This document shows, one piece after another, positions 6,065 to 64,000 of a stretch of DNA of 64,000 bases. The stretch is taken from positions 193,534-257,533 of IMG/VR virus record IMGVR_UViG_3300023296_000874. One strand, 5' to 3'. The first letter of the stretch is position 1; each line of letters begins with the position of its first letter. The notes under the pieces were generated by a model. The model saw only the letters and a list, made by a program, of their open reading frames with translations. It made no database searches and had not been told where the DNA came from. Both the position numbers and the translations under genes were made by a program.

Positions 6065-6080
6065 TACAAAAGCATCATGA
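6065..6080 (-). promoter_or_regulatory. Putative late promoter motif (degenerate, overlaps the upstream stop codon)
   Basis: TCATGATGCTTTTGTA, 22 nt upstream of ATG 6043. Confidence 0.55.
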
Positions 6081-7277: not shown

Positions 7278-7289
7278 GGTGTACCTCAC

Positions 7290-50482: not shown

Positions 50483-50532
50483 CAAGGTTCTCCGGGTAGG
50501 AAGGTACCCATCAAACACCAAGAACCATCAAG

Positions 50533-51099: not shown

Positions 51100-53474
51100 T
51101 CGTCCACCTCGATCTCATCCTCATCGTCAAATTCATCATCCTCATCGTCGTAGCCGTCGTCATTGACGTGGTACTCAACGCGGTAGGCGCTCTCTGCTGA
51201 GGCGCTCCAATGCGCAATGCTGTTGCCAGCCTCTTGTGAGGACTCACGGTAGGCGAGTTCATTGTGTCGCTCGCTCCGCACGTCAGGGAACACCATGTCT
51301 GCCATGTGCCGGTCCCTTTCACTGTCGACGCCATGTACCTGGCCGTAGGTCGGTGGAGCCTTCTTGGGGAGTGCGGCTTGTACCTCGCGCCAGTTGTCCT
51401 TCACCCACTGCATGATCATGCTGCCGGGGATTTCCTTCTTGGTCCGCTTGCGGAGTTGAAGGTTGATGCGTGAGCTGAAGCTCTTGCCGTCAACATACTC
51501 GTACTCCACGGTAGCGCTCAACACCTTGCGGATCACATCGTCGGGGCTGATCTTCCCGAGCATCAGCTCCTTGACGTAGGGGTCAAGAGCGCGCAAGCCC
51601 TTGTTCATCATCCGTCGCAGGTACTTGTCCAGCAGGCTCACCATCCCGCGCGGGGTCTTGGCAAAGTCGTCCTGGCCGAGGGTGCTCACGGTGTACTTCT
51701 TGTCCTCGAAGCTCACCTTCACCTCAAGCATCTTCAGGGCCTTCCACGAGTCCTCGCCACCGTCAGGGTCAAACTCGCCCTGGAGAGTGTACTCACCGCT
51801 GGCAATGGACCCCCACTCATTCCAGGTGATGTCAGCGCCGGGCAGGATGTTGATCACGGAGTGCTTCGCAGCTTTCACAGCCACCGCAATCGCGGCCATA
51901 TGCGCCGGGTCAGGCTTGCCCCGTGATCCAGAAATAGTCGCAATGCCCTCCGGAGTAAGTAGTGCGAGAACCTGCTTGAACACCTTGCGGCCATCAGGCA
52001 TGTCCTTCTGTCTCCGGAACAGGTCCTTCATTCCGCGTGTTCCAGCAACGTTCGGGTACACAAGGCAGTCTCGAGTCTTGCTCGCGTTTGACCACCCGCC
52101 CACTTCCATCTTCACGATGGTGTACTTGCCTACCTTGAGCCGGTGGTCCACTACGGACCCCATGGAGATGCTGCTGTCAATGTGGATGTTCGCCCGCCTC
52201 CACTTCTTCTGGAACAGGTTCTCCAGCTCAATCATCCAAGGCTCTGGAGTGGTGGATACCTGACTCCCGTAGTACGTGGCGAGCTTGGCAATCTTGGCAG
52301 AGGCAACGCGGGGATTCTTGAACCGGAAGGGACGTCCCTTCCACTTGGCAGCCATGAGGCGGCGGATGGCGACGTAGTTGGGTCCGAGGAACGCCCGGAT
52401 CTCAGCCTTCACCTGGCCGAAGTTGCGCTGCACGTACCGGATGTTGCCCCATGTCCTCTTCTTGCGGAGGATCTCCTTGATCAGCTTCTTCCCGTCCTTG
52501 GGGCCAGTGCTCTCAAGGAGCTTCACGCCGATGTTGTTCGGGAACCAGTCCGGGTGGCCGTAGGTCTCGCCGTTCACGGTCACTGAGTAGAGGCCAGGGT
52601 TTTTGGCCCAGGCGCGGTAGCCCTCGGTGCGTCCCTTCATGAACTCGGAGAAGCGCCGTCCAAGCACCTCCATTCCCTTGACGATGTCCTTCGGGCTGCT
52701 TGGATCGTAGAGGAAGTCGAACGGCATGGTCACGCCGCGCAACGAGCCTATGCCCTTCTGGTAGAGCTCAGGGGCGTCCTTCTCGAGGTTGAAGCCCGTG
52801 GGAGGCTTCTTGATCTCGTTCATCCAGACGGTGTCGTCCTTGCCCCGTCCCTTCTCATCACGCTGACGCTTGGTGGGGAGATCAACGAGGTAGGAGCTCA
52901 GGTTCGAGGCGTCCACAATGGGAGGCTGTCCGTCGAACCTCATGTCGCCGTGGTGTAGCCCGCGCTGGATGCTGTAGTCGATTGGGTGTGTGGGAGCAAG
53001 CTGCTTGAGGACGGCCTTGTTCCGGATGCCCTTTCCCTGCCATACACCACGCCCGGAGATGCACTGCTCAAGCTTCCGCTTCACATGCCGTCCAGATACC
53101 CTTCCACCTCGAGCAACGAAGACGTGCTGCTCAGCCAGGTCAACGGCGGTGAATTGAGCCAGGGTCCACTTCCCCATCTCTGCGAACAGCTTGAGCCAGT
53201 CGAGTACCACCATGACGTCAACGTCCGAGGTGTCGTTCCACTGGTAGGAGGCCGCACCGCCCTGAATGCCCATTGCAAGCACCCAATCACTGACTGGTCC
53301 GGGCCATCCCTGCTGCTCAAGGTACTCGTAGAACTCGCCCTCAAGGCGGTCAAGGACTTCCTCTTTGACGTAGGCGAGCTTCCGACGATCGTCCCAAGCC
53401 CACAGCCAATCCATGCGGTTGTCCAATACCGGGTCAAACACTCCGGCAGTACGGAACAGGTGGTCAATGCTCAT
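51093..53474 (-). CDS. Multidomain protein with an N-terminal Pol-beta-type nucleotidyltransferase
   Basis: GGAASYQWNDTSDVDV and HPIDY motifs; internal RVASAKIAKLA. Confidence 0.65.
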   Translation of the reverse strand: MSIDHLFRTAGVFDPVLDNRMDWLWAWDDRRKLAYVKEEVLDRLEGEFYEYLEQQGWPGPVSDWVLAMGIQGGAASYQWNDTSDVDVMVVLDWLKLFAEMGKWTLAQFTAVDLAEQHVFVARGGRVSGRHVKRKLEQCISGRGVWQGKGIRNKAVLKQLAPTHPIDYSIQRGLHHGDMRFDGQPPIVDASNLSSYLVDLPTKRQRDEKGRGKDDTVWMNEIKKPPTGFNLEKDAPELYQKGIGSLRGVTMPFDFLYDPSSPKDIVKGMEVLGRRFSEFMKGRTEGYRAWAKNPGLYSVTVNGETYGHPDWFPNNIGVKLLESTGPKDGKKLIKEILRKKRTWGNIRYVQRNFGQVKAEIRAFLGPNYVAIRRLMAAKWKGRPFRFKNPRVASAKIAKLATYYGSQVSTTPEPWMIELENLFQKKWRRANIHIDSSISMGSVVDHRLKVGKYTIVKMEVGGWSNASKTRDCLVYPNVAGTRGMKDLFRRQKDMPDGRKVFKQVLALLTPEGIATISGSRGKPDPAHMAAIAVAVKAAKHSVINILPGADITWNEWGSIASGEYTLQGEFDPDGGEDSWKALKMLEVKVSFEDKKYTVSTLGQDDFAKTPRGMVSLLDKYLRRMMNKGLRALDPYVKELMLGKISPDDVIRKVLSATVEYEYVDGKSFSSRINLQLRKRTKKEIPGSMIMQWVKDNWREVQAALPKKAPPTYGQVHGVDSERDRHMADMVFPDVRSERHNELAYRESSQEAGNSIAHWSASAESAYRVEYHVNDDGYDDEDDEFDDEDEIEVDEW

Positions 53475-53911
53475 CGGTTCTCTCCGAAGTGTGCGCCGCC
53501 GAGGGTCTGCTGTAGGAGCCGCTCGATGGCGTCAAGCTGTCGGCTCAGATGGAGCGCGGCAGGCTCCATCCTCTCATCGCGTGCGTGAATGCCCAAGGCC
53601 AGTACGTGCTTGCACGGTCCAACACGGCGTCCATTCCTCTGCCAATCTTCACAGGTGCAGAGGTGTCCGCGTCGGGGGCGTAGGGTGATGTGAGGAGTGT
53701 AGATGTCGCCCTGGGAGCCTACGATGTCTCCCCAGATGCGGTCGTCATCGTACTGTAGGTTCCGGATGCGGATCTGATCCACCCGGCCCAACCGACGCTT
53801 CTCTCCAACCTCAATGAGGCGGTCGAGGGTCTCACGATGAACGCTAACGAGTCCTGCCCACTCTCGTACTTGCTCGAGTAGCTGCGGGATGGTGTCCTGA
53901 AGCTCTGGCAT
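53471..53911 (-). CDS. SWIM zinc-finger protein
   Basis: CTCEDW...PCKHVLAL. Confidence 0.8.
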   Translation of the reverse strand: MPELQDTIPQLLEQVREWAGLVSVHRETLDRLIEVGEKRRLGRVDQIRIRNLQYDDDRIWGDIVGSQGDIYTPHITLRPRRGHLCTCEDWQRNGRRVGPCKHVLALGIHARDERMEPAALHLSRQLDAIERLLQQTLGGAHFGENR

Positions 53912-53937
53912 GGGACCTCCTTACGAGGGACAGCCCC

Positions 53938-53953
53938 CACAAAAGGATTATGT
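53938..53953 (-). promoter_or_regulatory. Putative late promoter motif (its TAA is the asnB stop codon)
   Basis: ACATAATCCTTTTGTG. Confidence 0.7.
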
Positions 53954-55711
53954 CTGGTTTTCAAGCCACGCGGCGAACACAAACAGTGTCCAACAGAAGA
54001 GCGTGAGGTCCTTGTTGCCAGCGTAGTATTGATTGATGATGAGGTCGATGCGCCTCATGTCCAGGAACGCCCCGAGGTTGCGAAATCTCTGAGAGTGAAT
54101 CGCTCTTTTGAACCCTTCCTTGAAGGGTCCTCGGAGCAGTGCGTCAGTAGGTACGGTGAACCCCATCTTTGGGCGTCGGGTGATGTCGGATGACACTCCG
54201 AAGCTCTCTGCCACGTCCTTGAGGATGCGCTTGGTGGTGCCGTTGTACTTGAACTCGTCGGGAAGTCGAACCACGTACTCCATCAGATCACGGTCCAAGA
54301 ACGGCACCCGAGCCTCCACTGACGCTCCCATGGTCATCTTGTCCACCTTCATGAGCAGATCATCAGGAAGCCAGGTGAGCGTGTCCATTCGAGTGATCCT
54401 CGACTGGAGGGTCGTGTTCGCGTAGTCGTTCCAGATGGTCGGCATACGAGTCAGCGGGTTGTGATGGCGCGTCACGTCTGAGGTCACAATTCCCTTGCGG
54501 TCCAGGAAGTAGTTGGAGCGCTCCAAATGGTCAAGCATCGCGGGCATACCCACGTCGTTGACGTCCCGAGCCTTCAAGATGCTGTCGTACTGCCAGTAGC
54601 CCGCGAAGATCTCGTCAGCTCCCTCACCGCTGAGCATCACCGTGCATCCACGCTTCGCGATCCGGCTGAGGTGGAGCGTGGGGAAACAGGCCGCGTCTGA
54701 AAGCGGCTGGTCCATGTGATTGAGCACGTCAGGTAGGATGTTGACCATGTCGTCAAACGTCATGCCGCACTGGAAGTAGTTGAGGCCAAGCTCTCGGGCG
54801 ACTCCACCCGCGTAGCCGTACTCGTTGGCGTTGGGGTAGCCCACGTTGTAGACGTTGATGTCAGTGCCCAGCTCTTTGGCAGCAACGGCGCAGATTACAG
54901 AGCTGTCGACCCCACCACTCAGGAAGGCTCCGAGAGGTACCTCGCTCTGGAGGCGTCTACGCACTGCTTGAATGAGGAGCTCGCGCGTCCGGCCCACAGC
55001 GTTCTCGTAGGTGTCAGGGTGGACGGTCTGGTCCATGGTCCACCACCGGTCAATCTTGAGCTCGCGGGTCCGGAGGTCATAGACCATGTGGTGCCCTGGC
55101 GGGAGGGCGTGGATTCCTCTCCAGATGGTGTCAGGTCCGGGGATGTACCGGAAGGTGAAGTAGTCCGCAATCGCGTTGGGGTTGATGCCAAAGCCTGGGT
55201 AGGCGGACGTGATGGCCTTGATCTCAGAGCCGAAGGCGAAGCGGTTGCCGTCCAACGTGTAGTAGAGAGGCTTGATGCCAACGTGGTCCCTGGCCAGGAA
55301 CAGAAGCTTCGCCCTCTTGTCGAAGATGCTGAAAGCGAACATGCCTCGGAGCCTGTGAAGGAATCCGAAGCCGTGCTGTTCGTAGAGGTGGACCAGTACC
55401 TCGGTGTCGCTATTGGTCTTGAAGACGTGGCCCTGGCTCTCCAACTCAACCTTCAGACTGCCGTAGTTGTAGATCTCGCCGTTGAACACCACTTCAACGT
55501 TCCCGTCCTCGCTGGAGATGGGCTGCTTTCCTCCACTACGGTCGATGATCGCCAGCCGGTCAATGCCGTAGCCGATGGTCTGACCGAGGGACCTCCGGGT
55601 GACCCAGTTCTGATCATCAGGTCCACGGTGTGAGATGGACGTTGCCATCTTCGCGAGTTTGCCGTCGAGGGAGACGTTTCCGTTCTCGACCATTCCGAAA
55701 ATACCACACAT
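53948..55711 (-). CDS. asnB: Asparagine-synthase-family glutamine amidotransferase
   Basis: MCGIFG, HRGPD, FNGEIYN, LSGGVDSS, SGEGADEIFAGY, EARVPFLD. Confidence 0.93.
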   Translation of the reverse strand: MCGIFGMVENGNVSLDGKLAKMATSISHRGPDDQNWVTRRSLGQTIGYGIDRLAIIDRSGGKQPISSEDGNVEVVFNGEIYNYGSLKVELESQGHVFKTNSDTEVLVHLYEQHGFGFLHRLRGMFAFSIFDKRAKLLFLARDHVGIKPLYYTLDGNRFAFGSEIKAITSAYPGFGINPNAIADYFTFRYIPGPDTIWRGIHALPPGHHMVYDLRTRELKIDRWWTMDQTVHPDTYENAVGRTRELLIQAVRRRLQSEVPLGAFLSGGVDSSVICAVAAKELGTDINVYNVGYPNANEYGYAGGVARELGLNYFQCGMTFDDMVNILPDVLNHMDQPLSDAACFPTLHLSRIAKRGCTVMLSGEGADEIFAGYWQYDSILKARDVNDVGMPAMLDHLERSNYFLDRKGIVTSDVTRHHNPLTRMPTIWNDYANTTLQSRITRMDTLTWLPDDLLMKVDKMTMGASVEARVPFLDRDLMEYVVRLPDEFKYNGTTKRILKDVAESFGVSSDITRRPKMGFTVPTDALLRGPFKEGFKRAIHSQRFRNLGAFLDMRRIDLIINQYYAGNKDLTLFCWTLFVFAAWLENQT

Positions 55712-55716
55712 GGATT

Positions 55717-56508
55717 TCAGCTCTCCAAGTAGCGTTCATAGATGGATCCCTCAAGCACCTTTGCGACCGCATCGTAGTTGCGGATGGCGTCCTTCAGCGG
55801 CAGTCCAATCTTCTGGTACGCCGGTCGAGCCACGAATTCGCGCGGTACGTCAAGATGGTCAGCAAAGCTCTGGAGGGTGCTCTCAGGCACCTCACCATCT
55901 ACAAACAGGGTCTCGTAATGCACGGTCAAGGCGATGGGTTCAAGCACCGCCTCCCAGTGCTTCTGCTCGCGCCGTAGCTTACCGAGCTTGTCCAGCAGAT
56001 TGCCCAGAGGCAATTCCACTGTCCGGTCCTTCATCTTGTCCGGGTTGGGTGTCGCCCACACCTTCGTCCGGGTAGAAAGCTCCGCTGATACCAGCATCGC
56101 CAACACGTTGTCTCGCACCAGGTGGATGATCTTGAAATCGTGCCGGATCAGGAGGTCAAGCAGTGGGGAATGCTCCATGCGTACTGCGCCGGGCGTCATG
56201 GCTCCCCTCAGGAAGTCGTACTTGCAGTCGAACAGGATGAGATCTACGTCCCCGCTCAACCTACGCAGGTAGTTGAGGTACCCACCGAACAGTCCGGAGA
56301 CGTTGGCGAGGGTTGGAATGCACAGGCTCGGATTCTTCCGAACGCGCCCATGGAGATACTTGTAGTAGCCTCCGAGCTGCTCGTAGTCCTTGGGAATGAA
56401 TACCTCTCCGAAGGTCTGGATCTCTGGGTTGGTTGACATGACGGACCTCAGGACGGTTGTACCGCTCCTTTGCGTACCGACGATGACTGCGAATCGGGGC
56501 AAACCCAT
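55717..56508 (-). CDS. Sulfotransferase (Stf0-like)
   Basis: GTQRSGTT 5'-PAPS loop; IHLVRDN.L...VS. Confidence 0.85.
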   Translation of the reverse strand: MGLPRFAVIVGTQRSGTTVLRSVMSTNPEIQTFGEVFIPKDYEQLGGYYKYLHGRVRKNPSLCIPTLANVSGLFGGYLNYLRRLSGDVDLILFDCKYDFLRGAMTPGAVRMEHSPLLDLLIRHDFKIIHLVRDNVLAMLVSAELSTRTKVWATPNPDKMKDRTVELPLGNLLDKLGKLRREQKHWEAVLEPIALTVHYETLFVDGEVPESTLQSFADHLDVPREFVARPAYQKIGLPLKDAIRNYDAVAKVLEGSIYERYLES

Positions 56509-56518
56509 TGACGATCTC

Positions 56519-57055
56519 CTACTTTCGTACACTGAACTGGATGCGCATTTCCTTGACGGAGTTCATGTAGTGCCTGCGTGCGAAGTCCTTGTCCTTCTGC
56601 GGCAGATCCTTGAACTCGTCCTCATACGTGTAGTCGATGCTGATGGTCTTGAACAGGTCCTGGAACATGCCCCCTGAGAAGATGCGCTCGTTGAGCATGG
56701 TCACATGCCCCGGCACAATGGAGGTCTCGTGGGTCCAGTAGGGGAACCACCAATCCAGCTTCGTACCCGGAGCACACACGCGCCAAATCTCCCTGTAGAG
56801 CCCGCCGTAGGCTCCTTGAGGGATGTGTTCGATGGTGTGGTAGCTGTACACCTGAGTCACGGAGTTGTCCGGTAGAGGGATCAGCTTCGTAGCGTCGCAG
56901 ATGATGTCGACGTCCGGGTAGTCTCGAATGTCGATGCCGACGGAGCCCTTGTAGTGCTTGCGGTTGCCCACGCCCAGGTCCAGAAGGATGCCCTCTGTCC
57001 CGAACTCCGTGGTGATCTTGTCTCTGTACTTGGGGTTGGTCTTATCCGGTAGCAT
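56519..57055 (-). CDS. SAM-dependent methyltransferase (type 11-like)
   Basis: LDLGVG, GIDI, LPDNSV..VYSYHTIEH, EIWRVC.PG. Confidence 0.85.
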   Translation of the reverse strand: MLPDKTNPKYRDKITTEFGTEGILLDLGVGNRKHYKGSVGIDIRDYPDVDIICDATKLIPLPDNSVTQVYSYHTIEHIPQGAYGGLYREIWRVCAPGTKLDWWFPYWTHETSIVPGHVTMLNERIFSGGMFQDLFKTISIDYTYEDEFKDLPQKDKDFARRHYMNSVKEMRIQFSVRK

Positions 57056-57056
57056 C

Positions 57057-59381
57057 TCAGCCTCCTACAAGGTCGAATAGGGTTTCCTGCCACTCTTTGA
57101 GGTATCGTTGGTGCGTGAACAGGCGGCAGATGGTCTCCCGCCCTCGCATTCCCATACGCCGAGCAGCGTTCATGTTCTTCTGGCACCAAAGGAGATGCTC
57201 CGCGAGCTCCTCCTTGGTCTTGCCCGTGAATCCGTTGAGCCCGTTGGTGATGAACATGCTCTCATCGTGGTAGTCCATCGACACCAAACACGCGCCCTTG
57301 AGCATTGCCTCAGCTCTCGTCCTGGGCATGGGGCTACGGAGGGTAGTGTTGACGAACACGCTGTACCTGCCGAGCAGCTCTTGGTAGAGCCTGAACTGCT
57401 CCTTGGCTCGAGCCTGGGGAGGCAGCCTTGACGCGGCTTTCTGTACTTCGACCCTACTGAACTCACCGCCATCATCCCGTCCCAGATAGTCAATCTTGAA
57501 CAGGTCGTTGAGGTACTTGAACTCGTAGTAGCCACGATACCAGGGACGGTGACGGATGCTGTTTGCGGCGTAGATGAAGTCCCGGTCCCGGCGTCCGGGC
57601 GTGTACTCAGAGCTATCAAAACCCTGCCAGATGGTCCGGCTGTTCGGGAACTTCCACTGGCTCCATGCGTTGTAGGAGTTGCAGACGATGGGCATGTTGC
57701 CGACAAGGTTGCGGATACGATTCACCTCAACGTCCCACTCCTTCATGAGGTCGGGGCCGCGATAGTCAACGTCGAACATCCCGTGGAAGGGTGGCGTGCC
57801 GTGGCAGATCGCCACCCGAGGCATTCCCTTGGTCTCCTTGAGGAACCTGCGGAAGATTGCGCCCCACCCCTTCCCGAGTACGTCGTTGGATACACCCAGA
57901 GGGTTGGCGACGTTCTCATCGAAGTGGAGCAGTGCGAGGTCATAGTCCCGAGGGTCAATCTCGTCCATCTTCACGAACTGAGCGTTCTTGGGGAACGGTC
58001 GGTAGCTGTAGTCCCACGCCATCGTAGTGTCGTCCTCTGCGACGTAGAAGTCGTGAGGGAGCTTCCAGAGCTCGTACTGGTGTCCTACGTGCCAGCGGTA
58101 GGTGAGGATCTTGAGCCGCCGCTTGACGGTGCGGTTGGTATGGGAGAGTCGGGGCCGTAGGTCCTTGTGATAGAACGCTGTCGGGCTCTGGAACCCTCCG
58201 ATTTTCGGTCGCACGTCAATCCGAGAGAGGGTCTTGGAAGGCTGTGCTGGGGAGTACCTGTCCATCCTGCCGCGAGGGAGGATCATGTCGTCCGGAAGCA
58301 GGATGGTCACCTTTCGTGCGTGAGCGGTGTCAGGTACGCGGTCAACCGCCTTCACGTAGGAGTGCAGCGTTGCATAGTACCGAGCGAGTTGCCCGCCGCC
58401 TACAAGGTAGATCTCTACGCCAGTGCGCCACTGAGCGAGTGCCGACTCAATCACGAAGGGGTGCTGAGCCTCGTTGAAGGAAGTCAGCTCAATCGACACA
58501 ACGCCCCAAGGTCGTCCGGTGTGGCCGTCGGTGAACACCTCTTGCGTGGGGTTCGTGTTCTTGAACCACGAGTAGATCTTCCCGTAGGTCTCAACGATCC
58601 AGGGCAACGCCTCTGTGTAGACCACCGCTGGGTTGTGCATGAGGAACCGGCTGAAGTTCCTCATGGATCTCAAAGGCTTGATCATCGGGTCGGTCGTGGA
58701 CGGGTGGCTGAGGTGGACCGTGAACGCTTCGTTGGTGTAGCTGAAGTGCAGTCCGCTCTTGAACAGGTTCCACCCGGCCTCAACGTCCTCCCATCCGAAG
58801 CCTGAGTTCGGGTCGGTGCCCACGTAGGCGTAGTCCTCGTTGAACATCCCACCGGGCGGAACAGCGCCACGCTTGAACGACACGTTGCGGGTGATGAAGT
58901 TCAGGAAGTAGCCTGGGTTCGCGGGGTACTGAAGAGAGGTCTCTGCGTCCCTCTTGGCGGGGTTCCTCTGTAGCTGGTCAATAAGCCCCCAGATCTCCCT
59001 GCCGTTAGACTCGATGTTGTAGGCCCCGATGAGCACGTCCTTCACTTCGTGGTGTGTGAGCTCATGGATGTGAACCTCAGCGAACCGTGCGTTAGGGATG
59101 CAGTCCGAGTCCACGATGCAAATGAACTCGGCAGAGCTCTCACGCACGCCGATGTTCCGAGCCTTGCACTGGCCGCTGTTACGTCCCAGGCGGATGTACT
59201 CAATGCGGAAGTCCTTGCCGTACCGTTGGATGACACCTTGATAGTCCACATCGGAACAGTCGTCGACGAGGATCAGCTCAAACTCCTTGCTCGTCTGCCT
59301 CTTCAAGCCCTCAAAGAAGGTGGTCAAGGACTTGACGTCCTTGTTGTAGACGGTGGCTACGATGGAGAGTTTCGGGGTCAC
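57057..59381 (-). CDS. Bifunctional glycosyltransferase (GT2 GT-A plus GT-B domain)
   Basis: LSIVATVYN, LILVDDCS, ARNIG, VDSD, GWEDVE; C-terminal EAMLKG...NGLNGF. Confidence 0.88.
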   Translation of the reverse strand: MTPKLSIVATVYNKDVKSLTTFFEGLKRQTSKEFELILVDDCSDVDYQGVIQRYGKDFRIEYIRLGRNSGQCKARNIGVRESSAEFICIVDSDCIPNARFAEVHIHELTHHEVKDVLIGAYNIESNGREIWGLIDQLQRNPAKRDAETSLQYPANPGYFLNFITRNVSFKRGAVPPGGMFNEDYAYVGTDPNSGFGWEDVEAGWNLFKSGLHFSYTNEAFTVHLSHPSTTDPMIKPLRSMRNFSRFLMHNPAVVYTEALPWIVETYGKIYSWFKNTNPTQEVFTDGHTGRPWGVVSIELTSFNEAQHPFVIESALAQWRTGVEIYLVGGGQLARYYATLHSYVKAVDRVPDTAHARKVTILLPDDMILPRGRMDRYSPAQPSKTLSRIDVRPKIGGFQSPTAFYHKDLRPRLSHTNRTVKRRLKILTYRWHVGHQYELWKLPHDFYVAEDDTTMAWDYSYRPFPKNAQFVKMDEIDPRDYDLALLHFDENVANPLGVSNDVLGKGWGAIFRRFLKETKGMPRVAICHGTPPFHGMFDVDYRGPDLMKEWDVEVNRIRNLVGNMPIVCNSYNAWSQWKFPNSRTIWQGFDSSEYTPGRRDRDFIYAANSIRHRPWYRGYYEFKYLNDLFKIDYLGRDDGGEFSRVEVQKAASRLPPQARAKEQFRLYQELLGRYSVFVNTTLRSPMPRTRAEAMLKGACLVSMDYHDESMFITNGLNGFTGKTKEELAEHLLWCQKNMNAARRMGMRGRETICRLFTHQRYLKEWQETLFDLVGG

Positions 59382-60415
59382 AGGAGCCCTCCCAGGTCAG
59401 GCGGCATCAGAACGGAGTGATGGTCGAGGACGTACTTCTGGAGGCTGTCCCCGTAGGATCGGCGCTCCTGAGGACGGTCAATGAGCCTCTGGATGTAGTG
59501 GTCCCATTCCTCCGGCGTCCGCGCCTTGTGAACCACTGAGGATGGAATGTCTCCGAGTGCGCCGGTTGGTGACACCACGCTCGGGATGCCAAACACTCCG
59601 GATTCGATCACCTTGACGATGCTCTTGCAGCGGTTGAACCTCGTGTCCTCAAGGGGTACAAGGTTGATGTCGAACAGGGAGTTCAGAGTCAGCGGTAGGA
59701 GCTGTGGGCGCACATGCTGCCACTTCCAAAGCCGGTACTTCGGGTACCACTTCTGCTCAAACTCCGGCGCAAGAGGCAGCTCGCCAATGATGTGCAGGTC
59801 CACGTAGTCCCTGCTCTCCATGATGCGGTCCAACACTGGAACGATCAGAGCGAAGTCCTTGCGGTGCGTCCGGGTGCCGGAGGCGTATCCGATGTTCACG
59901 CGGCTTGGGTCACGTAGAGCTCTTCCGGTCTGCGCCAGGCGGGCTACGTGCTGCTCAATCTTGTTCCGAACCACGTAGACGGTCTTCTCCGGCCAGCGTA
60001 GACGCACCTCCTCAGCGAGCCGGTCGGTAGACACGGTCACAAACTGAGCCCATTCAACAGCCGCCGCTACACCCTCACTCTTCTCCTGGTCGTAGACTGC
60101 CCCCTCAGGAACAGCGTCAACGTCCCACACCAGGTCGTCAAGGTCGTACCCGTAATGAGCAGCCTCTTCGGCCACCCTATCGAAGTGGTGTGCGTTGGCC
60201 TGAGTCAGCGGGATGCGCTGTACGATGGTGGTACTACCCGGAATGTCCGTCCAAGGCGTTGTCGGGGGCGACGTCACCCACCAGTGCGCTGGATCAAAGC
60301 CGATCCAGCAGACAGCTTGGTGCCCGTGGCTGATGAGGTGGCGATGCACGGTGAACGCGCGGTACCTCGAGCAGCCAACGAACTCATCATCTTCTGCAAC
60401 CCAAACGAACTTCAT
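59378..60415 (-). CDS. GT-B (GT4-like) glycosyltransferase
   Basis: DLDDL, IGYASGTRTH..D, DINLVPL...FN.CKS..K..E. Confidence 0.85.
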   Translation of the reverse strand: MKFVWVAEDDEFVGCSRYRAFTVHRHLISHGHQAVCWIGFDPAHWWVTSPPTTPWTDIPGSTTIVQRIPLTQANAHHFDRVAEEAAHYGYDLDDLVWDVDAVPEGAVYDQEKSEGVAAAVEWAQFVTVSTDRLAEEVRLRWPEKTVYVVRNKIEQHVARLAQTGRALRDPSRVNIGYASGTRTHRKDFALIVPVLDRIMESRDYVDLHIIGELPLAPEFEQKWYPKYRLWKWQHVRPQLLPLTLNSLFDINLVPLEDTRFNRCKSIVKVIESGVFGIPSVVSPTGALGDIPSSVVHKARTPEEWDHYIQRLIDRPQERRSYGDSLQKYVLDHHSVLMPPDLGGLL

Positions 60416-61395
60416 CGGTTCTCCTTCATCCACTCAACGGTGCGTGTGAGGCCTCGTAGCAGGTGGAATTTCGGCGCGTAGCCGAAGTAGAACTGTGCTC
60501 TTGCGATGTCTGCGAGCGTGCCGGGCACATCTCCCTCTTGGTCACCGATGTGCTCGATGATGGGCTTCTTGCCTACAAGCTCGCCAATGAGCTCCACCGT
60601 GTAGCTGAGAGTGTTCGGCGTACCGAACCCCAGGTTGTAGATGTGGTGTCCCTTACGGGGCGTACCAGCGGCAGCCAGGATACCGTCAACGATGTCATCG
60701 ACGTAGGTGTAGTCCCTGAACGAGCTGCCGTCTCCGTAGAGCGTTATGGTCTCTCCGCGCTCTACCTTGCCGATAGTGTCACGAATGAACATGTCAGGTC
60801 GTCCGTGAGGTCCGTACACCGTGAAGAAGCGGAGGGATGCTCTGATCCGGTCGGTGCTCTGCGCGTAGTAGTCCATGAGCAGCTCGCACTGTCTCTTGGT
60901 CACGGCGTAGGGGCTGATCATCGCGGTGGGGCGGTCACTCTCTTTGAAGGGAGAGCGGAGGGTGCCGTAGATGGATGAGCTGCTGGCGAACACCACATCA
61001 GCGTCGTGGTTCTTGGCGAACTCCAGAACGGCCACGGTCCCTTCCACGTTGGTACGGGAGTAGCGCAGAGGATCAACCAGGCTGGGTCGCACGCCAGCAA
61101 GCCCCGCGAGGTGGAACACCGTGTCGACACCCTTGCGAGCCCAGATGGCAGCCGAGCTCTGAGCGCTGCTCAGGTTGCACACGTCTTCATCGACCCACCC
61201 CAGATCGTCGACGACATGGAAGTCAGCCGTCACGGGTCCTCCGAAAATGCGTGCGAGGTTTTTCCGCTTCACGTCCTCACCGTAGAGGGTCTCGTCGAGA
61301 CAGTCTACGATCAGAACGCTGTGGCCGAGCTCTCGCAGCCTGAGTACGAGGTTGGTGCCAATGAACCCGGCACCTCCGGTGACCAGAACTCTCAT
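60412..61395 (-). CDS. NAD-dependent nucleotide-sugar epimerase (UDP-glucuronate 4-epimerase-like)
   Basis: TGGAGFIG, AGVRPS, ASSSS, SPYAVTK, LRFFTVYGP.GRPDM. Confidence 0.9.
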   Translation of the reverse strand: MRVLVTGGAGFIGTNLVLRLRELGHSVLIVDCLDETLYGEDVKRKNLARIFGGPVTADFHVVDDLGWVDEDVCNLSSAQSSAAIWARKGVDTVFHLAGLAGVRPSLVDPLRYSRTNVEGTVAVLEFAKNHDADVVFASSSSIYGTLRSPFKESDRPTAMISPYAVTKRQCELLMDYYAQSTDRIRASLRFFTVYGPHGRPDMFIRDTIGKVERGETITLYGDGSSFRDYTYVDDIVDGILAAAGTPRKGHHIYNLGFGTPNTLSYTVELIGELVGKKPIIEHIGDQEGDVPGTLADIARAQFYFGYAPKFHLLRGLTRTVEWMKENR

Positions 61396-61396
61396 C

Positions 61397-62461
61397 CTAT
61401 CCTCCATGTACGGTCTTGAATACGCCCGCCCAGGTGCCTACGACCTGGGCGATGTCGAACCGGGCTCGCACGTAACGAGCTCCGTTCTGCTTCACGTTCC
61501 CACGCAGCTCAGGATTGTCAACCAGCTTGCGCACGGTCTGAATCCATTCGGCAGGGTTGCGGCAGAGGAATCCATTGTCCCCGTCTCGGATGGTGGCGTT
61601 GTAGGTGATTAGGTTTGAGGCCACGGGCACGAAACCACACGCCATGTACTCGATGACCTTGAGATTGCTCTTCGAGTAGTTGAAGAGGTGGTCCGCTACG
61701 GGAGCCAGGCCAATGTCGATAGGTAGAGATGCCAGGTACCGGAGGTAGGTCCTCGGCGGCACCATCTCCAGGAACATGATCTGGTCGTGGGACGTAGCCT
61801 CAACGGTCTCCTTGTGAGCCGCCCCACCCATGACGATCATCACCTTGTTCCCGTACTGACGGGTGATGCGCTTCAGGCACGGGACAATGAGCTGGAGGTC
61901 CTTCTTGTGGGTAGGCGATCCGAGCCAGCCAATCACGGTGCGACCCTCGCACCTGGTGAAGAACTCGTCGGTGGAGATCTTGTTGCAGTTGCGGTCCAAC
62001 GCCGAGATCATCTGGGGGGCTGTGCCCATCCGGTCCAACTCTCCGAAGTCGAGCGAGTTGGGGCAGACGTAGACCGTCGGGTTGTGCTTGCGCATCTGCT
62101 GCGCCAAGAACGGAGTGGAACAGATCACAGCGTCCGCAGCCTTCAGGTAGCGGATGACGTTCTGTCGGATGCGCATGTAGAAAGCGTGCGCGGGGTTCCA
62201 AGAGGGTAGGCTGAAGACGTCATCGTCAAGCTCGTAGATGACCTTCTTGCCGCGCTTCTTGAAGCTCTCAACTCGCCGTAGGAAGGAGAGCTCATACTGC
62301 TTCTGAACCACAATCACATCGGCCCAGAGGATCTCTGCGTCGGTGCTTCCGATGTGGCCCAGGCGGGCTTCAATACCGTGTGTCGGCAGGTAGCGGATCG
62401 GGATCTCGGCCCGGTAAAGGCCACACCCGTTCGGCCCCTCAGAGACGAAGAAAACTTTCAT
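61397..62461 (-). CDS. GT-B (GT4-like) glycosyltransferase
   Basis: YELDDD, IGWLGSPTH..DL, DIGLAP...FN.SKSNLK..EY.ACG. Confidence 0.88.
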   Translation of the reverse strand: MKVFFVSEGPNGCGLYRAEIPIRYLPTHGIEARLGHIGSTDAEILWADVIVVQKQYELSFLRRVESFKKRGKKVIYELDDDVFSLPSWNPAHAFYMRIRQNVIRYLKAADAVICSTPFLAQQMRKHNPTVYVCPNSLDFGELDRMGTAPQMISALDRNCNKISTDEFFTRCEGRTVIGWLGSPTHKKDLQLIVPCLKRITRQYGNKVMIVMGGAAHKETVEATSHDQIMFLEMVPPRTYLRYLASLPIDIGLAPVADHLFNYSKSNLKVIEYMACGFVPVASNLITYNATIRDGDNGFLCRNPAEWIQTVRKLVDNPELRGNVKQNGARYVRARFDIAQVVGTWAGVFKTVHGG

Positions 62462-62490
62462 GTGTATAGATCTGCTTTGTGTTTATTCTA

Positions 62491-62727
62491 TCAGGTGGTT
62501 CCGGTAGAGCCCGATGAGATCCCTCCAGAAGACTGAAGGGCGTCAACGGAGTTGCTGAAATCGTCCACGACGCTCTCGGGGATGTCCAGTGCGGCAGCAG
62601 TCCCGAGAGGGGTGCTGATGATCCGCATGGAGATCGCACCGGTCGCTGAGATGAGAACCTTGTAGACCCACTGGTCAGCTCCAGAGCCGGAGGTGTAGGT
62701 GTACTCCTGCTGGAATAGTGTGGGCAT
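62491..62727 (-). CDS. Small hypothetical protein
   Basis: TGATG coupling. Confidence 0.6.
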   Translation of the reverse strand: MPTLFQQEYTYTSGSGADQWVYKVLISATGAISMRIISTPLGTAAALDIPESVVDDFSNSVDALQSSGGISSGSTGTT

Positions 62728-63014
62728 CAGTCAAGGTCCCGGTTCTGACGTAGAAGCTGCTTGGTACGCTTGCGGTCACGTCGGCTGTGTCCCTTCTCGT
62801 ACTGGTCAGAGTGCGGGCCACCCTTGTTCCGTAGAGGTCCACCGGGGCGACGGTTGCGCTCGTTCCAATCCTTCTTCTTCTCGATGGCTCGCAGGTCCTC
62901 GGGAGTGAGGACCATGACGCCTTTCTCATTGGTGCGGGGCTTCTTGACCTTCCGCTTGGCAGACTTGCGAAGGTCTGACGCCACCGCGCTCAGCCGATTG
63001 CTTACATCACTCAT
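62727..63014 (-). CDS. Small basic protein with a leader (MSDVSNRLSAVASDLRKSA)
   Basis: GGAGG RBS; R/K-rich; GGPH.D...SRR.RK. Confidence 0.65.
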   Translation of the reverse strand: MSDVSNRLSAVASDLRKSAKRKVKKPRTNEKGVMVLTPEDLRAIEKKKDWNERNRRPGGPLRNKGGPHSDQYEKGHSRRDRKRTKQLLRQNRDLD

Positions 63015-64000
63015 GACATCCTCCAAATGGTGCCCAGGAAACCTACTGTCACCTTGTCACCGCCCATCACCCTCTGGTTCACGGCGCAGACAATGGGCAG
63101 GGACAGTCGGTCAAAGGTAGCTTCAATCTGTACGCCGAGGCTATGAACCGCACGTTCGATCTCAGGTCGGGTGGAGCGCGAGATTCCCTCCACCACCTCA
63201 TCGAAACGGAACTCAACCTCAACGTGCCGCCCCGCCTCAACCTGAGAGGCAATACCACTCAGGTCACCTCCCAAGCTGATGCGGGTTTGTGCCAGTTGAT
63301 GCACGACAAGCTCAAGCACTTCCAGCGTACTCAAGCCAGTCAGAATCCTATTCTGCAAGCTCTTCAAGGTGTCCAAAGTGGCCCTGAAAACCTCCGAATA
63401 GGTAGCATCTTCCGAGAGGTGTTCCATCTCACCGAGCGTTTTGATACTCTGGTAGATCACCTGCAAATCCTTGTCCACCCGTTCGGAGCTTACACGCTCC
63501 CACAGGTGGTGATCACCCTGGAACACCTCGCGGCCATCGCGAATGAGGTGGGTGATCAAGCCAAGCTCATCGAGCTCAGCCAGGTTTCGCTTGTTGTCGT
63601 CGTACACATGGACTTCAGCCCAGTTGCCTACGACGGTGTCCTGTACCCACTTCTTCTTCCGTGCCGCAGTGTCCTTGTGTCGGAACGGGCCACCGGAGGT
63701 GCTGTGGATGCGAGAGATCTTTCGAATGACGGGGCCGAGGTCTGGGTGTTGACGCCAGAGGTTCATCCACTCTTGAATGGCGCTCTTGTTCCGGCCTGAC
63801 AGAACCCAGTGCGTGCCGGGCGTCTTGTTCAGACGTGCCCACATCTCGAGCACGGGCATCGTCTCGAGCACTGCTTGAGTGCTCCAGTCGGCATCGTGCC
63901 ACCACCGGAAGCTTTCAACCTCCGGGTAGCGTCGTTTGAACTCCTCAACAGCCCTCACGCTCCACGCGAGGGTGTCATCAAAGTCCCAGATGTTGAGGCG
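63011..64000 (-). CDS. HAD phosphatase (Swiss-army-knife RNA-repair type) plus a helical C-terminal domain; 5' truncated
   Basis: Frame is open to the window edge: RLNIWDFDDTL, then WW, VLSGR, VYDDN. Confidence 0.7.
   Translation of the reverse strand, partial: RLNIWDFDDTLAWSVRAVEEFKRRYPEVESFRWWHDADWSTQAVLETMPVLEMWARLNKTPGTHWVLSGRNKSAIQEWMNLWRQHPDLGPVIRKISRIHSTSGGPFRHKDTAARKKKWVQDTVVGNWAEVHVYDDNKRNLAELDELGLITHLIRDGREVFQGDHHLWERVSSERVDKDLQVIYQSIKTLGEMEHLSEDATYSEVFRATLDTLKSLQNRILTGLSTLEVLELVVHQLAQTRISLGGDLSGIASQVEAGRHVEVEFRFDEVVEGISRSTRPEIERAVHSLGVQIEATFDRLSLPIVCAVNQRVMGGDKVTVGFLGTIWRMS

What the first reader, a model, noticed from the sequence alone, without database searches (positions are those of the whole stretch)
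53948..62461. Phage-encoded glycan operon with sulfation, amidation and methylation
Seen: seven tightly coupled genes (GT-B, UDP-glucuronate-4-epimerase-like, GT-B, GT-A/GT-B fusion, methyltransferase, Stf0-like sulfotransferase, AsnB-type amidotransferase), co-oriented with late genes, with no flippase, polymerase or priming transferase. Known: AsnB-like enzymes amidate uronic acids in bacterial polysaccharides, and some mycobacteriophages glycosylate capsid and tail proteins with their own glycosyltransferases. Inference: a cytoplasmic pathway builds a sulfated, methylated, uronamide-containing glycan on virion proteins, or alternatively on DNA or the host surface. A sulfated virion glycan would be unusual.
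Basis: partly seen in the sequence, partly recalled or inferred. Interest (0 to 1): 0.75.

Follow-up and report, generated by a model that had tools for sequence, protein, structure and literature searches.

The report
Jumbo-phage sulfated uronamide glycan cassette
A giant salt-lake bacteriophage carries an intact, conserved set of seven cytoplasmic enzymes, copied from bacterial O-antigen machinery and apparently switched on with the virion genes, that should build a sulfated, methylated, amidated uronic-acid glycan whose target (most likely the virus particle) sequence alone cannot settle.

Summary
Seven tightly packed minus-strand genes (62461-53948) encode a GT-B, a MoeE5-like UDP-glucuronate 4-epimerase, a second GT-B, a GT-A/GT-B fusion, a small methyltransferase, a sulfotransferase and an AsnB amidotransferase. 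All have intact catalytic motifs.

The window is the end of a 257.5-kb phage contig from salt-lake metagenomes. A second assembly and four sequencing runs show the same junctions, so it is not a mis-assembly.

New findings:
1. The same cassette, in the same order, occurs in two other related phage lineages (36-80% aa identity). More distant relatives lack it.
2. Its core (GT-B, fusion GT, AsnB) comes from bacterial ABC-transporter (Wzm/Wzt) O-polysaccharide loci. The fusion GT looks like a polymerase.
3. The held contig has no exporter, priming enzyme, PAPS or UDP-GlcA supply genes, and no known route to a DNA sugar acceptor.
4. A phage promoter-like motif that precedes the capsid, portal, terminase, sheath and endolysin units also precedes the cassette's unit and marks its 3' end.

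Best reading: a late, cytoplasmic glycan pathway, most likely decorating virions (about 0.45). Remodelling of the host O-antigen is the main rival (about 0.3). The acceptor is not shown.

The parts
63011..64000 (-). 332-aa HAD-family phosphatase ORF (T5 dNMPase / PNKP-phosphatase-like). It is the first gene of the inferred transcription unit. Its GTG start lies 9 nt beyond the window end.
   Evidence: The sister contig L094 gives the full ORF (L094 4527-5525). Atlas feature score is 0.93 to PF26880 and PF25109 clusters, with a weak phrog_415 match. A promoter-like motif (score 17.5) lies at L094 4479-4501, which is 35-57 nt beyond the window end and 25 nt before the GTG, with a GGAGG between them.
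62491..62929 (-). Two small overlapping ORFs (84 aa at 62929-62675 and 78 aa at 62727-62491) between the HAD gene and GT1. Function unknown.
   Evidence: ORF list; no Pfam match. Whether they are real genes was not tested.
61397..62461 (-). GT1: GT-B (GT4-like) glycosyltransferase, 354 aa.
   Evidence: PF13692 1.5e-12, PF00534 3.1e-10; phrog_7162 1.4e-43. It is a distant paralogue of GT3 (26% id, 5e-15). The nearest cultured-phage homologue is Streptomyces phage Zuko gp5, which lies next to a UDP-glucose dehydrogenase gene.
60412..61407 (-). NAD-dependent SDR nucleotide-sugar 4-epimerase, most like UDP-glucuronate 4-epimerases, 331 aa.
   Evidence: PF01370 2.9e-50. Best solved relatives are MoeE5 at 8.2e-51 and the chain 6zl6 at 3e-32 (which I recall, unchecked, as a Bacillus UDP-GlcA epimerase); GalE scores about 1e-28. 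GGAGFIG and YAVTK are present.
59378..60433 (-). GT3: second GT-B glycosyltransferase, 351 aa.
   Evidence: phrog_7162 1e-28; PF13524 is weak. Homologues lie directly upstream of the fusion-GT homologue, or are fused to it, in about 12 bacterial loci.
57057..59381 (-). Bifunctional GT-A (GT2) / GT-B fusion, 774 aa, polymerase-like.
   Evidence: PF00535 2.5e-23 at aa 6-136. The AF2 model has pLDDT 83.6 with two well-folded domains (1-280, 420-774). Best PDB match for the N-domain is E. coli K4 chondroitin polymerase (5e-16); the C-domain matches GT4 enzymes PglA, BshA and MshA. It is homologous over its full length to the C-terminal ~770 aa of 1000-1500-aa bacterial multi-GT proteins.
56519..57055 (-). 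Small class-I SAM-dependent methyltransferase, 178 aa.
   Evidence: PF08241 8.4e-6; phrog_6636 2.4e-9; LDLGVG motif. Homologues sit next to stand-alone GT-B homologues in unrelated low-GC phage contigs.
55717..56532 (-). PAPS-type sulfotransferase (Sulfotransfer_3). The ORF is 271 aa; the likely product is 263 aa starting at 56508.
   Evidence: PF13469 at 40.2 bits against a cut-off of 27. An invariant QRSGTT loop and R140...S149 are conserved across the family. The AF2 model has pLDDT 88.5, and its best folds are HS 3-O-sulfotransferase-3, TPST2 and Stf0. There is no tblastn match in 50,697 phage records.
53948..55711 (-). AsnB-type glutamine-dependent amidotransferase, 587 aa.
   Evidence: PF00733 5.4e-81, PF13537 6.5e-45; TIGR01536 at 467 bits against a cut-off of 267. 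N-terminal MCGI and the PP-loop SGGVDS are present. A homologue lies within 10 kb of the fusion-GT homologue in 42 of 66 bacterial loci, often directly downstream.
53937..53959 (-). Late-type promoter-like motif (~CATAATCCnTTTGTAG class) inside the last codons of asnB. It marks the 3' boundary of the cassette and the start of the next unit (SWIM ORF, 793-aa ORF, pyrophosphatase).
   Evidence: PWM score 24.0, 25 nt before the SWIM ORF start. The same motif is at the same place in the diverged relative L019/L095, with score 26.9.

Best explanation
This is a self-contained, cytoplasmic glycan-assembly cassette carried by a jumbo phage. It was captured from bacterial ABC-transporter-type O-polysaccharide loci and is expressed from the phage's late-type promoter class.

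Inferred chemistry:
1. The host supplies UDP-glucuronate, PAPS, SAM, glutamine and ATP.
2. The MoeE5-like epimerase makes UDP-galacturonate.
3. The two single-domain GT-B enzymes start or adapt the chain on the acceptor.
4. The GT-A/GT-B fusion adds two sugars alternately and probably polymerises a disaccharide repeat that contains a uronic acid.
5. AsnB converts uronate carboxyls to carboxamides.
6. The methyltransferase and sulfotransferase decorate or cap the chain.

Because the cassette is soluble, has no exporter of its own and seems to be co-regulated with head, tail, packaging and lysis genes, the most likely acceptor is one or more virion proteins. That would give a charged glycan coat.

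Shown here: gene content, intact motifs, conservation of the cassette, its bacterial origin, the absence of transport and supply genes in the held contig, and the distribution of the promoter motif. Inferred: sugar identities, the order of steps, late timing and the acceptor.
For: - Genes and motifs.
- Selection: all seven genes are kept in order in L004-6 (65-80% aa id) and in L019/L095 (36-58%), next to the same phage genes. Of 35 population SNPs across 52000-57900 in four runs, 28 are synonymous (8 of 13 in the cassette genes), and there are no indels or joints.
- Composition: GC equals that of the genome.
- Origin: the 66 bacterial loci found with the fusion-GT alignment (62 match its C-terminal GT-B domain, 47 its full length) have AsnB nearby in 42 of 66, a GT3-like gene adjacent in about 12, and Wzt (with Wzt_C) or Wzm in at least 17 of 58. 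There is a published precedent for a uronamide O-PS made by the ABC route with glutamine amidotransferases (PMC2615507).
- Soluble pathway: none of the seven proteins has a TM-like segment, and the phage has no Wzm/Wzt.
- Late class: 24 motif sites score >=17 on the minus strand against 0.05 expected. They precede the units of the major head protein, protease, portal, terminase and connector-like gene, plus tail sheath and endolysin. The motif is absent before DNA polymerase and before the clamp-loader/FEN/NusG block. One site lies 25 nt before the HAD gene that opens the cassette's unit, and one lies at the cassette's 3' end; the latter is conserved in L019.
- Precedent: virion glycosylation by phage glycosyltransferases in mycobacteriophages, as summarised in PMC12619734.
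Against: - No acceptor is identified.
- The major head protein is 64-80% identical, end to end, to that of relatives that lack the cassette, and it has no extra C-terminal tail.
- All three GT components have homologues inside bacterial O-PS loci. Their ancestral acceptor was therefore a lipid-linked glycan, not a protein.
- 'Late' is inferred from a motif, not from expression data; no RNA run was listed. The motif also precedes non-structural genes (NUDIX hydrolases, pyrophosphatase, CCA-adding enzyme).
- The site before the cassette's unit is the weakest of its class (17.5) and lies outside the window.
- The complex prediction for GT1 with the head protein gave no answer.
- About 19% of the genome is not in the contig.
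Confidence: 0.45

Rival explanations
1. Host envelope remodelling. The phage enzymes extend a lipid-linked primer made by the host (Und-PP-GlcNAc type) into a new, capped O-polysaccharide or exopolysaccharide. The host's own Wzm/Wzt and ligase then export it and attach it. This would change the surface of the infected cell, for example to exclude other phages or to stop progeny adsorbing to debris.
For: The nearest cellular homologues of GT3, the fusion GT and AsnB are neighbours in Wzm/Wzt O-PS loci that also hold methyltransferases of the chain-terminator kind. This pathway polymerises in the cytoplasm without Wzx or Wzy, so the missing genes are exactly those a host could supply. The fusion GT resembles a polymerase (K4 chondroitin polymerase fold). 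The phage appears to infect a peptidoglycan-bearing, probably diderm, bacterium (OmpA-domain protein).
Against: No exporter, ligase or priming gene is present in 257 kb. The cassette would depend on a compatible host exporter, although Wzt proteins with a C-terminal domain are specific for the chain cap. The unit carries the late-type motif, and surface remodelling just before lysis has little obvious value. The phage versions lack the 330-600-aa N-terminal extensions of the bacterial proteins.
Confidence: 0.3
2. The glycan is put on another soluble acceptor: a non-virion phage protein (for example the conserved neighbouring 793-aa protein), a host protein, a lipid or a small molecule. The sulfotransferase might even act on protein tyrosine rather than on sugar.
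For: The sulfotransferase fold is as close to tyrosylprotein sulfotransferases as to carbohydrate ones. The 793-aa ORF follows the cassette in all three cassette-bearing lineages and is absent from cassette-less relatives. The MoeE5/AsnB pairing also occurs in a small-molecule pathway (moenomycin; my own knowledge, and for the MoeE5 match).
Against: A polymerase-like bifunctional GT plus two further GTs points to a sizeable glycan rather than a decoration on a metabolite. In bacteria the sulfotransferase homologues sit in polysaccharide clusters. The 793-aa ORF starts a separate unit behind its own motif.
Confidence: 0.12
3. DNA hypermodification. The enzymes build a sugar chain on a modified base of the phage genome to escape restriction.
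For: Phage gene clusters with GT-A and GT-B enzymes that glycosylate 5hmC with mono- to trisaccharides are known (10.1101/2023.12.21.572611). The genes upstream of the unit are replication genes (clamp loader, FEN). A nucleotide-phosphatase-like HAD gene opens the unit.
Against: The 257-kb contig has no thymidylate-synthase-family hydroxymethylase and no C5-cytosine methyltransferase. A Tet/JBP search also found nothing, but its control rang in no genome, so that result shows little. Hence no known route to a hydroxymethyl-pyrimidine acceptor was found. The homologues are O-PS enzymes, not the DNA-GT families. No sulfated or amidated DNA sugar is known to me.
Confidence: 0.05
4. A passenger: host-derived genes with no function in the phage, or an assembly chimera.
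For: The cassette is absent from the more distant relatives, including one 315-kb genome rated 100% complete.
Against: Independent assemblies and four runs agree. All seven ORFs are intact in three lineages that have diverged to 36-58% identity. Catalytic motifs are intact. Synonymous SNPs predominate. GC equals that of the genome.
Confidence: 0.03

Closest known systems
Virion glycosylation by phage-encoded glycosyltransferases in mycobacteriophages (Freeman et al. 2023, as summarised in PMC12619734)
   Same: Phage-borne soluble glycosyltransferases act in the cytoplasm with no flippase or oligosaccharyltransferase. Expression with virion genes is inferred here.
   Different: Those systems use one to a few glycosyltransferases and put glycans on C-terminal tails of capsid and tail-tube subunits. 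Here there are seven enzymes, including a nucleotide-sugar epimerase, a polymerase-like bifunctional GT, an amidotransferase, a methyltransferase and a sulfotransferase. The head protein has no extra tail. Modification of virions is not shown.
Bacterial ABC-transporter-dependent O-polysaccharide loci (for example the Bordetella bronchiseptica wbm locus with uronamide sugars, PMC2615507; E. coli O9a WbdA/WbdD, from my own knowledge)
   Same: Multi-domain polymerising GTs, a glutamine-dependent amidotransferase next to them, and methyltransferases. Assembly is entirely cytoplasmic. This is direct homology (34-46% id) with conserved adjacency of GT3, fusion GT and AsnB.
   Different: The phage has no Wzm/Wzt, no priming transferase and no ligase. 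Its fusion GT lacks the N-terminal extension of the bacterial proteins and carries a phage-specific linker insert of about 110-130 aa. A sulfotransferase is only rarely linked in bacteria (1 of 66 loci).
Glycan gene clusters of giant eukaryotic viruses (chlorovirus A064R multi-domain GT/methyltransferase; Mimivirus fibril glycan clusters; from my own knowledge)
   Same: Virus-encoded, host-independent cytoplasmic synthesis of complex, methylated glycans on virion proteins by bacterial-like enzymes, including multi-domain GTs.
   Different: The viral realm and host domain are different. No homology was tested here, and sulfation and uronate amidation are not, to my knowledge, features of those glycans.
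MoeE5/MoeF5 steps of moenomycin biosynthesis (my own knowledge; MoeE5 match)
   Same: A UDP-GlcA 4-epimerase paired with an AsnB-type amidotransferase, giving a galacturonamide unit.
   Different: That is a lipid-linked antibiotic pathway in Streptomyces. Only the epimerase similarity was measured here (8e-51). The AsnB protein's best solved relative is a hydroxyamidotransferase (7ylz).
Phage DNA sugar-hypermodification clusters (Pyle et al., 10.1101/2023.12.21.572611)
   Same: Phage clusters of GT-A and GT-B enzymes recruited from LPS and teichoic-acid biosynthesis.
   Different: Those clusters are defined by an accompanying cytosine methyltransferase and 5mC dioxygenase (or a hydroxymethylase). 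None was found here.
E. coli K4 chondroitin polymerase KfoC
   Same: It is the best structural match of the fusion's GT-A domain (Foldseek 5e-16). It is a bifunctional enzyme that alternates a uronic acid with a second sugar.
   Different: KfoC has two GT-A domains, whereas this protein is GT-A plus GT-B. TM-scores are low (0.25-0.33), and sequence identity is 17-20%.

Membership tests
PAPS-dependent sulfotransferase, Sulfotransfer_3 (PF13469) | Score above the Pfam gathering cut-off | tested here: met
   40.2 bits against a cut-off of 27, although the aligned stretch covers only aa 16-52.
PAPS-dependent sulfotransferase, Sulfotransfer_3 (PF13469) | 5'-phosphosulfate-binding loop and 3'-phosphate-binding Arg...Ser motif; P-loop-kinase-like fold | tested here: met
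   Q21-R22-S-G24-T25-T26 and R140...S149 are invariant in 11 family members. The motif definitions come from my own knowledge. The AF2 model (pLDDT 88.5) best matches solved sulfotransferases.
Stf0 trehalose 2-sulfotransferase family (PF09037 / NF047724) | Score above the family cut-off | tested here: not met
   PF09037 scores 16.5 bits against a cut-off of 22. NF047724 scores 16.3 against 400. The Stf0 fold match is no better than those of HS 3-OST and TPST.
AsnB-type (class II, Ntn) glutamine amidotransferase / asparagine-synthase family | N-terminal Cys nucleophile, PP-loop ATP site, and score above the family cut-off | tested here: met
   MCGI and SGGVDS are present. TIGR01536 scores 467 bits against a cut-off of 267. 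PF00733 5.4e-81.
AsnB-type uronate amidotransferase (WbpS/MoeF5-like role) | The substrate is a uronic-acid carboxyl (nucleotide sugar or polymer) | not testable with these tools
   The only support is context: adjacency to a UDP-GlcA-epimerase-like gene and to GTs, and the same adjacency in 42 of 66 bacterial loci.
UDP-glucuronate 4-epimerase (MoeE5 / BcUGAepi type SDR) | Extended-SDR motifs GxxGxxG and YxxxK | tested here: met
   GGAGFIG and YAVTK are present.
UDP-glucuronate 4-epimerase (MoeE5 / BcUGAepi type SDR) | Closer to characterised UDP-GlcA epimerases than to GalE, dehydratases or decarboxylases | tested here: inconclusive
   MoeE5 is the best match at 8e-51, against about 1e-28 for GalE. 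However, chains named dTDP-glucose dehydratase and GalE rank second and third. No tree was built and the residues that bind the carboxylate were not checked.
ABC-transporter-dependent O-polysaccharide system | Multi-domain cytoplasmic polymerising glycosyltransferase | tested here: met
   Full-length homology to bacterial multi-GT proteins in Wzm/Wzt loci, plus a two-domain model.
ABC-transporter-dependent O-polysaccharide system | Wzm permease and Wzt ATPase | tested here: not met
   tblastn with 25 bacterial Wzt and Wzm sequences found only the ATPase of an importer, at genome 174 kb. The contig is rated 81% complete.
ABC-transporter-dependent O-polysaccharide system | Priming phosphoglycosyltransferase and O-antigen ligase (polytopic membrane proteins) | tested here: not met
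   A hydropathy scan found no credible polytopic protein other than the importer permease. No family-specific search for WecA, WbaP or WaaL was run.
Phage virion-glycosylation system (mycobacteriophage type) | Phage-encoded soluble glycosyltransferases expressed with virion genes | tested here: inconclusive
   The GTs are soluble. The late-type motif lies before the unit, but there are no expression data.
Phage virion-glycosylation system (mycobacteriophage type) | Glycan on capsid or tail proteins (C-terminal acceptor tails) | tested here: inconclusive
   The head protein has no extra C-terminal tail compared with cassette-less relatives. The complex prediction gave no answer. Modification itself cannot be tested by sequence.
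Phage DNA sugar hypermodification | An enzyme that makes a hydroxymethyl-pyrimidine acceptor (TS-family hydroxymethylase, or C5-methyltransferase plus TET/JBP) | tested here: not met
   PF00303 and PF00145 are absent from the 257-kb contig, with positive controls. PF12851 is also absent, but its control rang in no genome.
Temperate-phage O-antigen conversion (GtrABC) | GtrA flippase, a membrane-anchored GtrB and GtrC | tested here: not met
   The GT2 domain has only a generic match to phrog_22739 (3e-9). None of the seven proteins has a TM-like segment.

The most novel reading that the evidence does not exclude
A tailed bacteriophage coats its own particle with a glycosaminoglycan-like polymer that is sulfated, O-methylated and rich in uronamide. 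The polymer is made entirely in the cytoplasm by an O-antigen-polymerase-type machine that was detached from its membrane primer and exporter and placed under the phage's late promoter. This would be the first sulfated virion glycan, and the first functional sulfotransferase, described for a phage.
Probability: 0.35. Interest if true: 0.8.

Novelty: new variant of a known kind. Interest (0 to 1): 0.62.

Why it matters
Glycosyltransferases carried by viruses are known, but experimental work on phages covers only DNA glucosylation, O-antigen conversion by prophages, and short glycans on actinophage virions.

This is a seven-enzyme pathway that adds amidation, methylation and sulfation. It is kept intact in at least three diverged jumbo-phage lineages from saline waters. 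It extends the chemistry that phages are predicted to control.

I found no paper describing a phage sulfotransferase, and there is no homologue in 50,697 deposited phage records.

The cassette also shows how a cytoplasmic O-polysaccharide polymerase module can be moved into a virus without its membrane parts. It offers a compact, expressible gene set (about 8.5 kb) for testing whether such modules can be retargeted to proteins.

If the glycan is on virions, it bears on particle stability, adsorption and grazing or immune evasion in high-salt, sulfate-rich waters. If it is on the host envelope, it would be a lytic-phage form of seroconversion.

Tried and rejected
- DNA similarity of the whole cassette to 50,697 phage records: no match.
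- tblastn of the sulfotransferase against the same records: no match.
- Search of viral contigs with the fusion GT as a single sequence: only distant GT2 hits.
- Five jumbo relatives found through the portal protein (40-47% id): they lack AsnB, the fusion GT and the 793-aa ORF, so they give no comparison of the insertion site.
- Supply genes: APS kinase and UDP-glucose dehydrogenase are absent from the contig. ATP sulfurylase was not searched.
- Sigma-70 promoter and intrinsic-terminator scan of 49000-64000: fewer hits than in shuffles, so uninformative.
- tRNA scan of the window: none found.
- Ser/Thr-rich acceptor tails: only an 11-triplet G-X-T run in a 1154-aa ORF outside the window. The head protein has no added tail.
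- Complex prediction of GT1 with the head protein: no answer.
- RNA runs: none was listed, so expression could not be examined.
- First call to the look-up of sequencing runs failed and was repeated.
- Freeman et al. 2023 could not be read. It is cited only through another paper's summary.
- The 793-aa neighbour has no Pfam or PHROG family and only weak Atlas leads.
- Haloarchaeal host, considered because of the salt lake, 59% GC and sulfated archaeal glycans: I reject it. The phage encodes an OmpA-domain protein, and none of the organism names among the homologues of the fusion GT or the importer permease is archaeal.
- Membership of the 'moraphage' lineage (PMC12619734): not pursued. I found nothing that links it to this phage.

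Full report
**What the window is.** The window is the last 64 kb of a 257,533-bp IMG/VR virus record that CheckV rates 81% complete and that has no terminal repeats. It is a tailed phage.
- Inside the window, all on the minus strand, are a terminase large subunit (36126-37937), portal (32615-34219), head-maturation protease (27303-28790) and major head protein (24034-24927; phrog_2522, 2e-55).
- Elsewhere on the contig are a tail sheath, an endolysin and a family-A-type DNA polymerase.
- GC is flat at 0.58-0.62 across the window, cassette included.
- The cassette DNA is found in at least 22 public runs, all labelled 'salt lake metagenome'.

**Checking the observation.**
- The two GT-B proteins are distant paralogues (26% identity), both in phrog_7162.
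- The SDR protein has the Rossmann and YxxxK motifs. Its best solved relative is MoeE5, which I know to be the moenomycin-pathway UDP-GlcA 4-epimerase, at 8e-51. GalE scores about 1e-28.
- The 774-aa protein models with confidence as a GT-A domain (aa 1-280) and a GT-B domain (aa 420-774), joined by a poorly ordered linker. The GT-A domain is closest to E. coli K4 chondroitin polymerase, and the GT-B domain is closest to GT4 enzymes.
- The methyltransferase is a short class-I enzyme.
- The sulfotransferase passes the Sulfotransfer_3 cut-off but not the Stf0 cut-offs. It keeps an invariant QRSGTT loop and an Arg...Ser pair. Its model folds like solved sulfotransferases, with carbohydrate-specific and tyrosine-specific ones ranking alike.
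- AsnB has Cys2 and the SGGVDS PP-loop, and passes TIGR01536.
- None of the seven has a TM-like segment.

**It is not an artefact.** A contig from a sister sample (Ga0222634_1000108, L094) is 99.98% identical over 15.9 kb. It spans both junctions of the cassette and continues 4.5 kb past the window end into phage replication genes. Logan contigs of four runs cover 52000-57900 with no joints or indels. Of the 35 SNPs they show, 28 are synonymous.

**Conservation in related phages.** Metagenome contigs L004-L006 carry the end of the fusion GT, then MT, ST and AsnB, and then the homologue of the 793-aa ORF, at 65-80% amino-acid identity. L019, and the near-identical L095, carry all seven genes in the same order at 36-58% identity. 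The same downstream phage genes follow them. Five relatives that share a portal at 40-47% identity, including a 315-kb genome rated complete, have neither AsnB nor the fusion GT. The cassette is therefore an accessory module of one sub-lineage, kept intact over substantial divergence.

**Where it came from.**
- Homologues of the sulfotransferase (40-47% identity) lie in bacterial polysaccharide clusters beside AsnB and very large multi-domain GTs.
- A search of one genome per prokaryote species with an alignment of the fusion GT returned 66 loci at 31-50% best-segment identity. They come from Proteobacteria, Nitrospirota, Myxococcota and Bdellovibrionota.
- In these loci an AsnB homologue lies within 10 kb in 42 of 66, often directly downstream. 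A GT3-like gene lies directly upstream, or is fused to the GT, in about 12.
- After AsnB and the epimerases, the most recurrent neighbours are Wzt (ABC_tran plus the Wzt_C domain), Wzm (ABC2_membrane) and methyltransferases. At least 17 of 58 loci hold Wzt or Wzm within the stretch I held.
- These are ABC-transporter-dependent O-polysaccharide loci. The Bordetella wbm locus is a published example that makes a uronamide O-chain by this route with glutamine amidotransferases (PMC2615507).
- Compared with the bacterial proteins, the phage fusion GT lacks the 330-600-aa N-terminal extension and has a phage-specific insert in its linker.

**What the phage does not encode.** The 257-kb contig has none of the following:
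- APS kinase or UDP-glucose dehydrogenase;
- a second GT2;
- Wzm or Wzt;
- a convincing polytopic membrane protein, apart from the permease of a nitrate/sulfonate/bicarbonate-type importer;
- a thymidylate-synthase-family enzyme or a C5-cytosine methyltransferase. A Tet/JBP search was also negative, but its control rang in no genome.

The phage must therefore draw UDP-GlcA, PAPS and SAM from the host. In the sequence held, I found no known way for it to create a DNA sugar acceptor.

**Regulation.** K-mer enrichment in intergenic DNA revealed a motif, roughly TCATAATCCnTTTGTAG. It is followed by about 16 nt, a GGAGG, about 6 nt and then a start codon.
- A weight matrix built from 14 sites finds 24 sites scoring at least 17 on the minus strand. 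The expectation is 0.05 per shuffled strand, and the plus strand has one site.
- The sites open the units that contain the head protein, the protease, the portal, the terminase and a connector-like gene, and they precede the tail sheath and the endolysin.
- There is none before the DNA polymerase, and none in the clamp-loader/NusG-like/FEN/sigma-like block just upstream of the cassette.
- I read this as the phage's late promoter class. That is an inference.
- One site that was not used to build the matrix (score 17.5) lies 25 nt before the GTG of a HAD-phosphatase gene, just beyond the window end. No further site occurs until the last codons of asnB (score 24.0). That 3' site is conserved in L019, with score 26.9.
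- The unit is therefore the HAD gene, two small ORFs and the seven glycan genes.

**Mechanism.** The chemistry follows from the families named above:
1. UDP-GlcA is epimerised to UDP-GalA.
2. The two GT-B enzymes and the bifunctional GT build a chain containing a uronic acid, probably a repeating one.
3. AsnB amidates the uronate.
4. Methylation and sulfation decorate or cap the chain.

The acceptor is the open question.
- For virion proteins: the pathway is soluble and has no exporter, it carries the late-type motif, and there is precedent in mycobacteriophages and, from my own knowledge, in giant viruses.
- Against that, and for a host lipid-linked acceptor: every GT component has a counterpart in O-PS loci, and the pathway's missing parts are exactly what a Gram-negative host supplies.
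- The head protein shows no cassette-linked extension, and a complex prediction was uninformative.
- My estimates: virion proteins 0.45, host envelope 0.30, another soluble acceptor 0.12, DNA 0.05, no function 0.03.

**Novelty.** Virus-encoded glycan clusters are a known kind. This combination of enzymes has no counterpart in deposited phage genomes or in the literature I could search. The distinctive features are the nucleotide-sugar epimerase, the polymerase-type GT, uronate amidation, O-methylation and sulfation, together with the apparent late control and the conservation across lineages. The sulfotransferase subfamily itself is not rare in cellular metagenomes: 432 representative clusters match at E<=1e-30. 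I rate the finding a new variant of a known kind, with interest 0.62.

Noticed in passing
window sites (5' end on the minus strand): 1725, 6086, 9079, 16362, 17884, 17961, 21982, 22243, 23871, 26947, 32612, 36120, 44444, 53959; also 13 sites elsewhere in G000:C1: A strongly over-represented promoter-like motif (~TCATAATCCnTTTGTAG, then ~16 nt, GGAGG, ~6 nt, start codon) precedes nearly every minus-strand unit of the structural region, as well as the endolysin and tail sheath. There are 24 sites against 0.05 expected. It is probably the phage's late promoter, and a sigma-region-4 protein is encoded just upstream of the cassette's unit (L094 3237-3845).
   Followed up: partly
G000:C1:171385-174796 (L096 385-3796), outside the window: The phage encodes a complete ABC importer of the nitrate/sulfonate/taurine/bicarbonate type. 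It consists of an NMT1-like binding protein fused to an OmpA domain (560 aa), a BPD_transp_1 permease and an ATPase. The nearest named cellular permeases (55-61% id) are from Deltaproteobacteria and Myxococcota MAGs. A link to sulfur supply for sulfation is possible but untested.
   Followed up: partly
window 63011-64000 (ORF continues to 64009 in L094): The first gene of the cassette's unit is a HAD phosphatase resembling T5 5'-deoxynucleotidase and the PNKP 3'-phosphatase. It could remove PAP, the inhibitory by-product of sulfotransfer. This is speculation only.
   Followed up: partly
window 53471-53911: The 146-aa SWIM-finger ORF matches only the C-terminal 138 aa of a 485-aa topoisomerase-IB/SWIM protein at the same position in relative L019 (45% id). 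It is missing altogether from relative L004. It is still under purifying selection here (6 synonymous SNPs to 1 non-synonymous).
   Followed up: partly
window 51093-53474: A 793-aa ORF with no family assignment follows the cassette in all three cassette-bearing lineages (80% and 41% id). It is absent from cassette-less relatives. The L019 counterpart carries a cREC_REC domain.
   Followed up: partly
window 50533-51099: An InPase-family inorganic pyrophosphatase (PF18823, 2.4e-36) lies in the unit just downstream of the cassette. It could pull PPi-releasing reactions forward (AsnB, nucleotide-sugar synthesis).
   Followed up: no
G000:C1:122742-126206 (minus strand), outside the window: A 1154-aa putative fibre protein has 11 consecutive G-X-T collagen-like triplets (aa 64-96). 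From my own knowledge, Thr-rich collagen-like repeats are O-glycosylated in Bacillus BclA. It is a candidate acceptor to test.
   Followed up: no
L094 1-4535 (beyond the window end): The contig is incomplete at this end. The sister contig Ga0222634_1000108 continues into a clamp loader, a NusG-like protein, a 5'-3' exonuclease and a sigma-region-4 protein, and it does not join the other end of G000. The genome is therefore at least about 262 kb and probably around 300 kb.
   Followed up: partly
L022-L026 (IMG/VR contigs, 33-37% GC): Unrelated low-GC phage contigs carry stand-alone homologues of the fusion's C-terminal GT-B domain (27-31% id), sometimes in two copies. In three of the five contigs a homologue of the small methyltransferase lies within about 2 kb upstream. 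This GT-B and methyltransferase pair seems to recur in phages.
   Followed up: no
L098 (Streptomyces phage Zuko 1319-3384) and L097 (Escherichia phage tuntematon): The closest cultured-phage homologue of GT1 sits next to a UDP-glucose dehydrogenase gene, just before the terminase and portal, in Zuko. Phapecoctaviruses carry four consecutive GT genes beside their primase/helicase. Neither system has a known acceptor, as far as I could see.
   Followed up: no
window 24034-24927 versus 32615-34219: The major head protein is 64-80% identical to that of relatives whose portal is only 40-47% identical. This means either very unequal rates or exchange of modules.
   Followed up: no
window 6075-7289: A CCA-adding tRNA nucleotidyltransferase (phrog_2244, 7e-30) lies inside a unit of the structural region, yet no tRNA gene is present in the window.
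   Followed up: no
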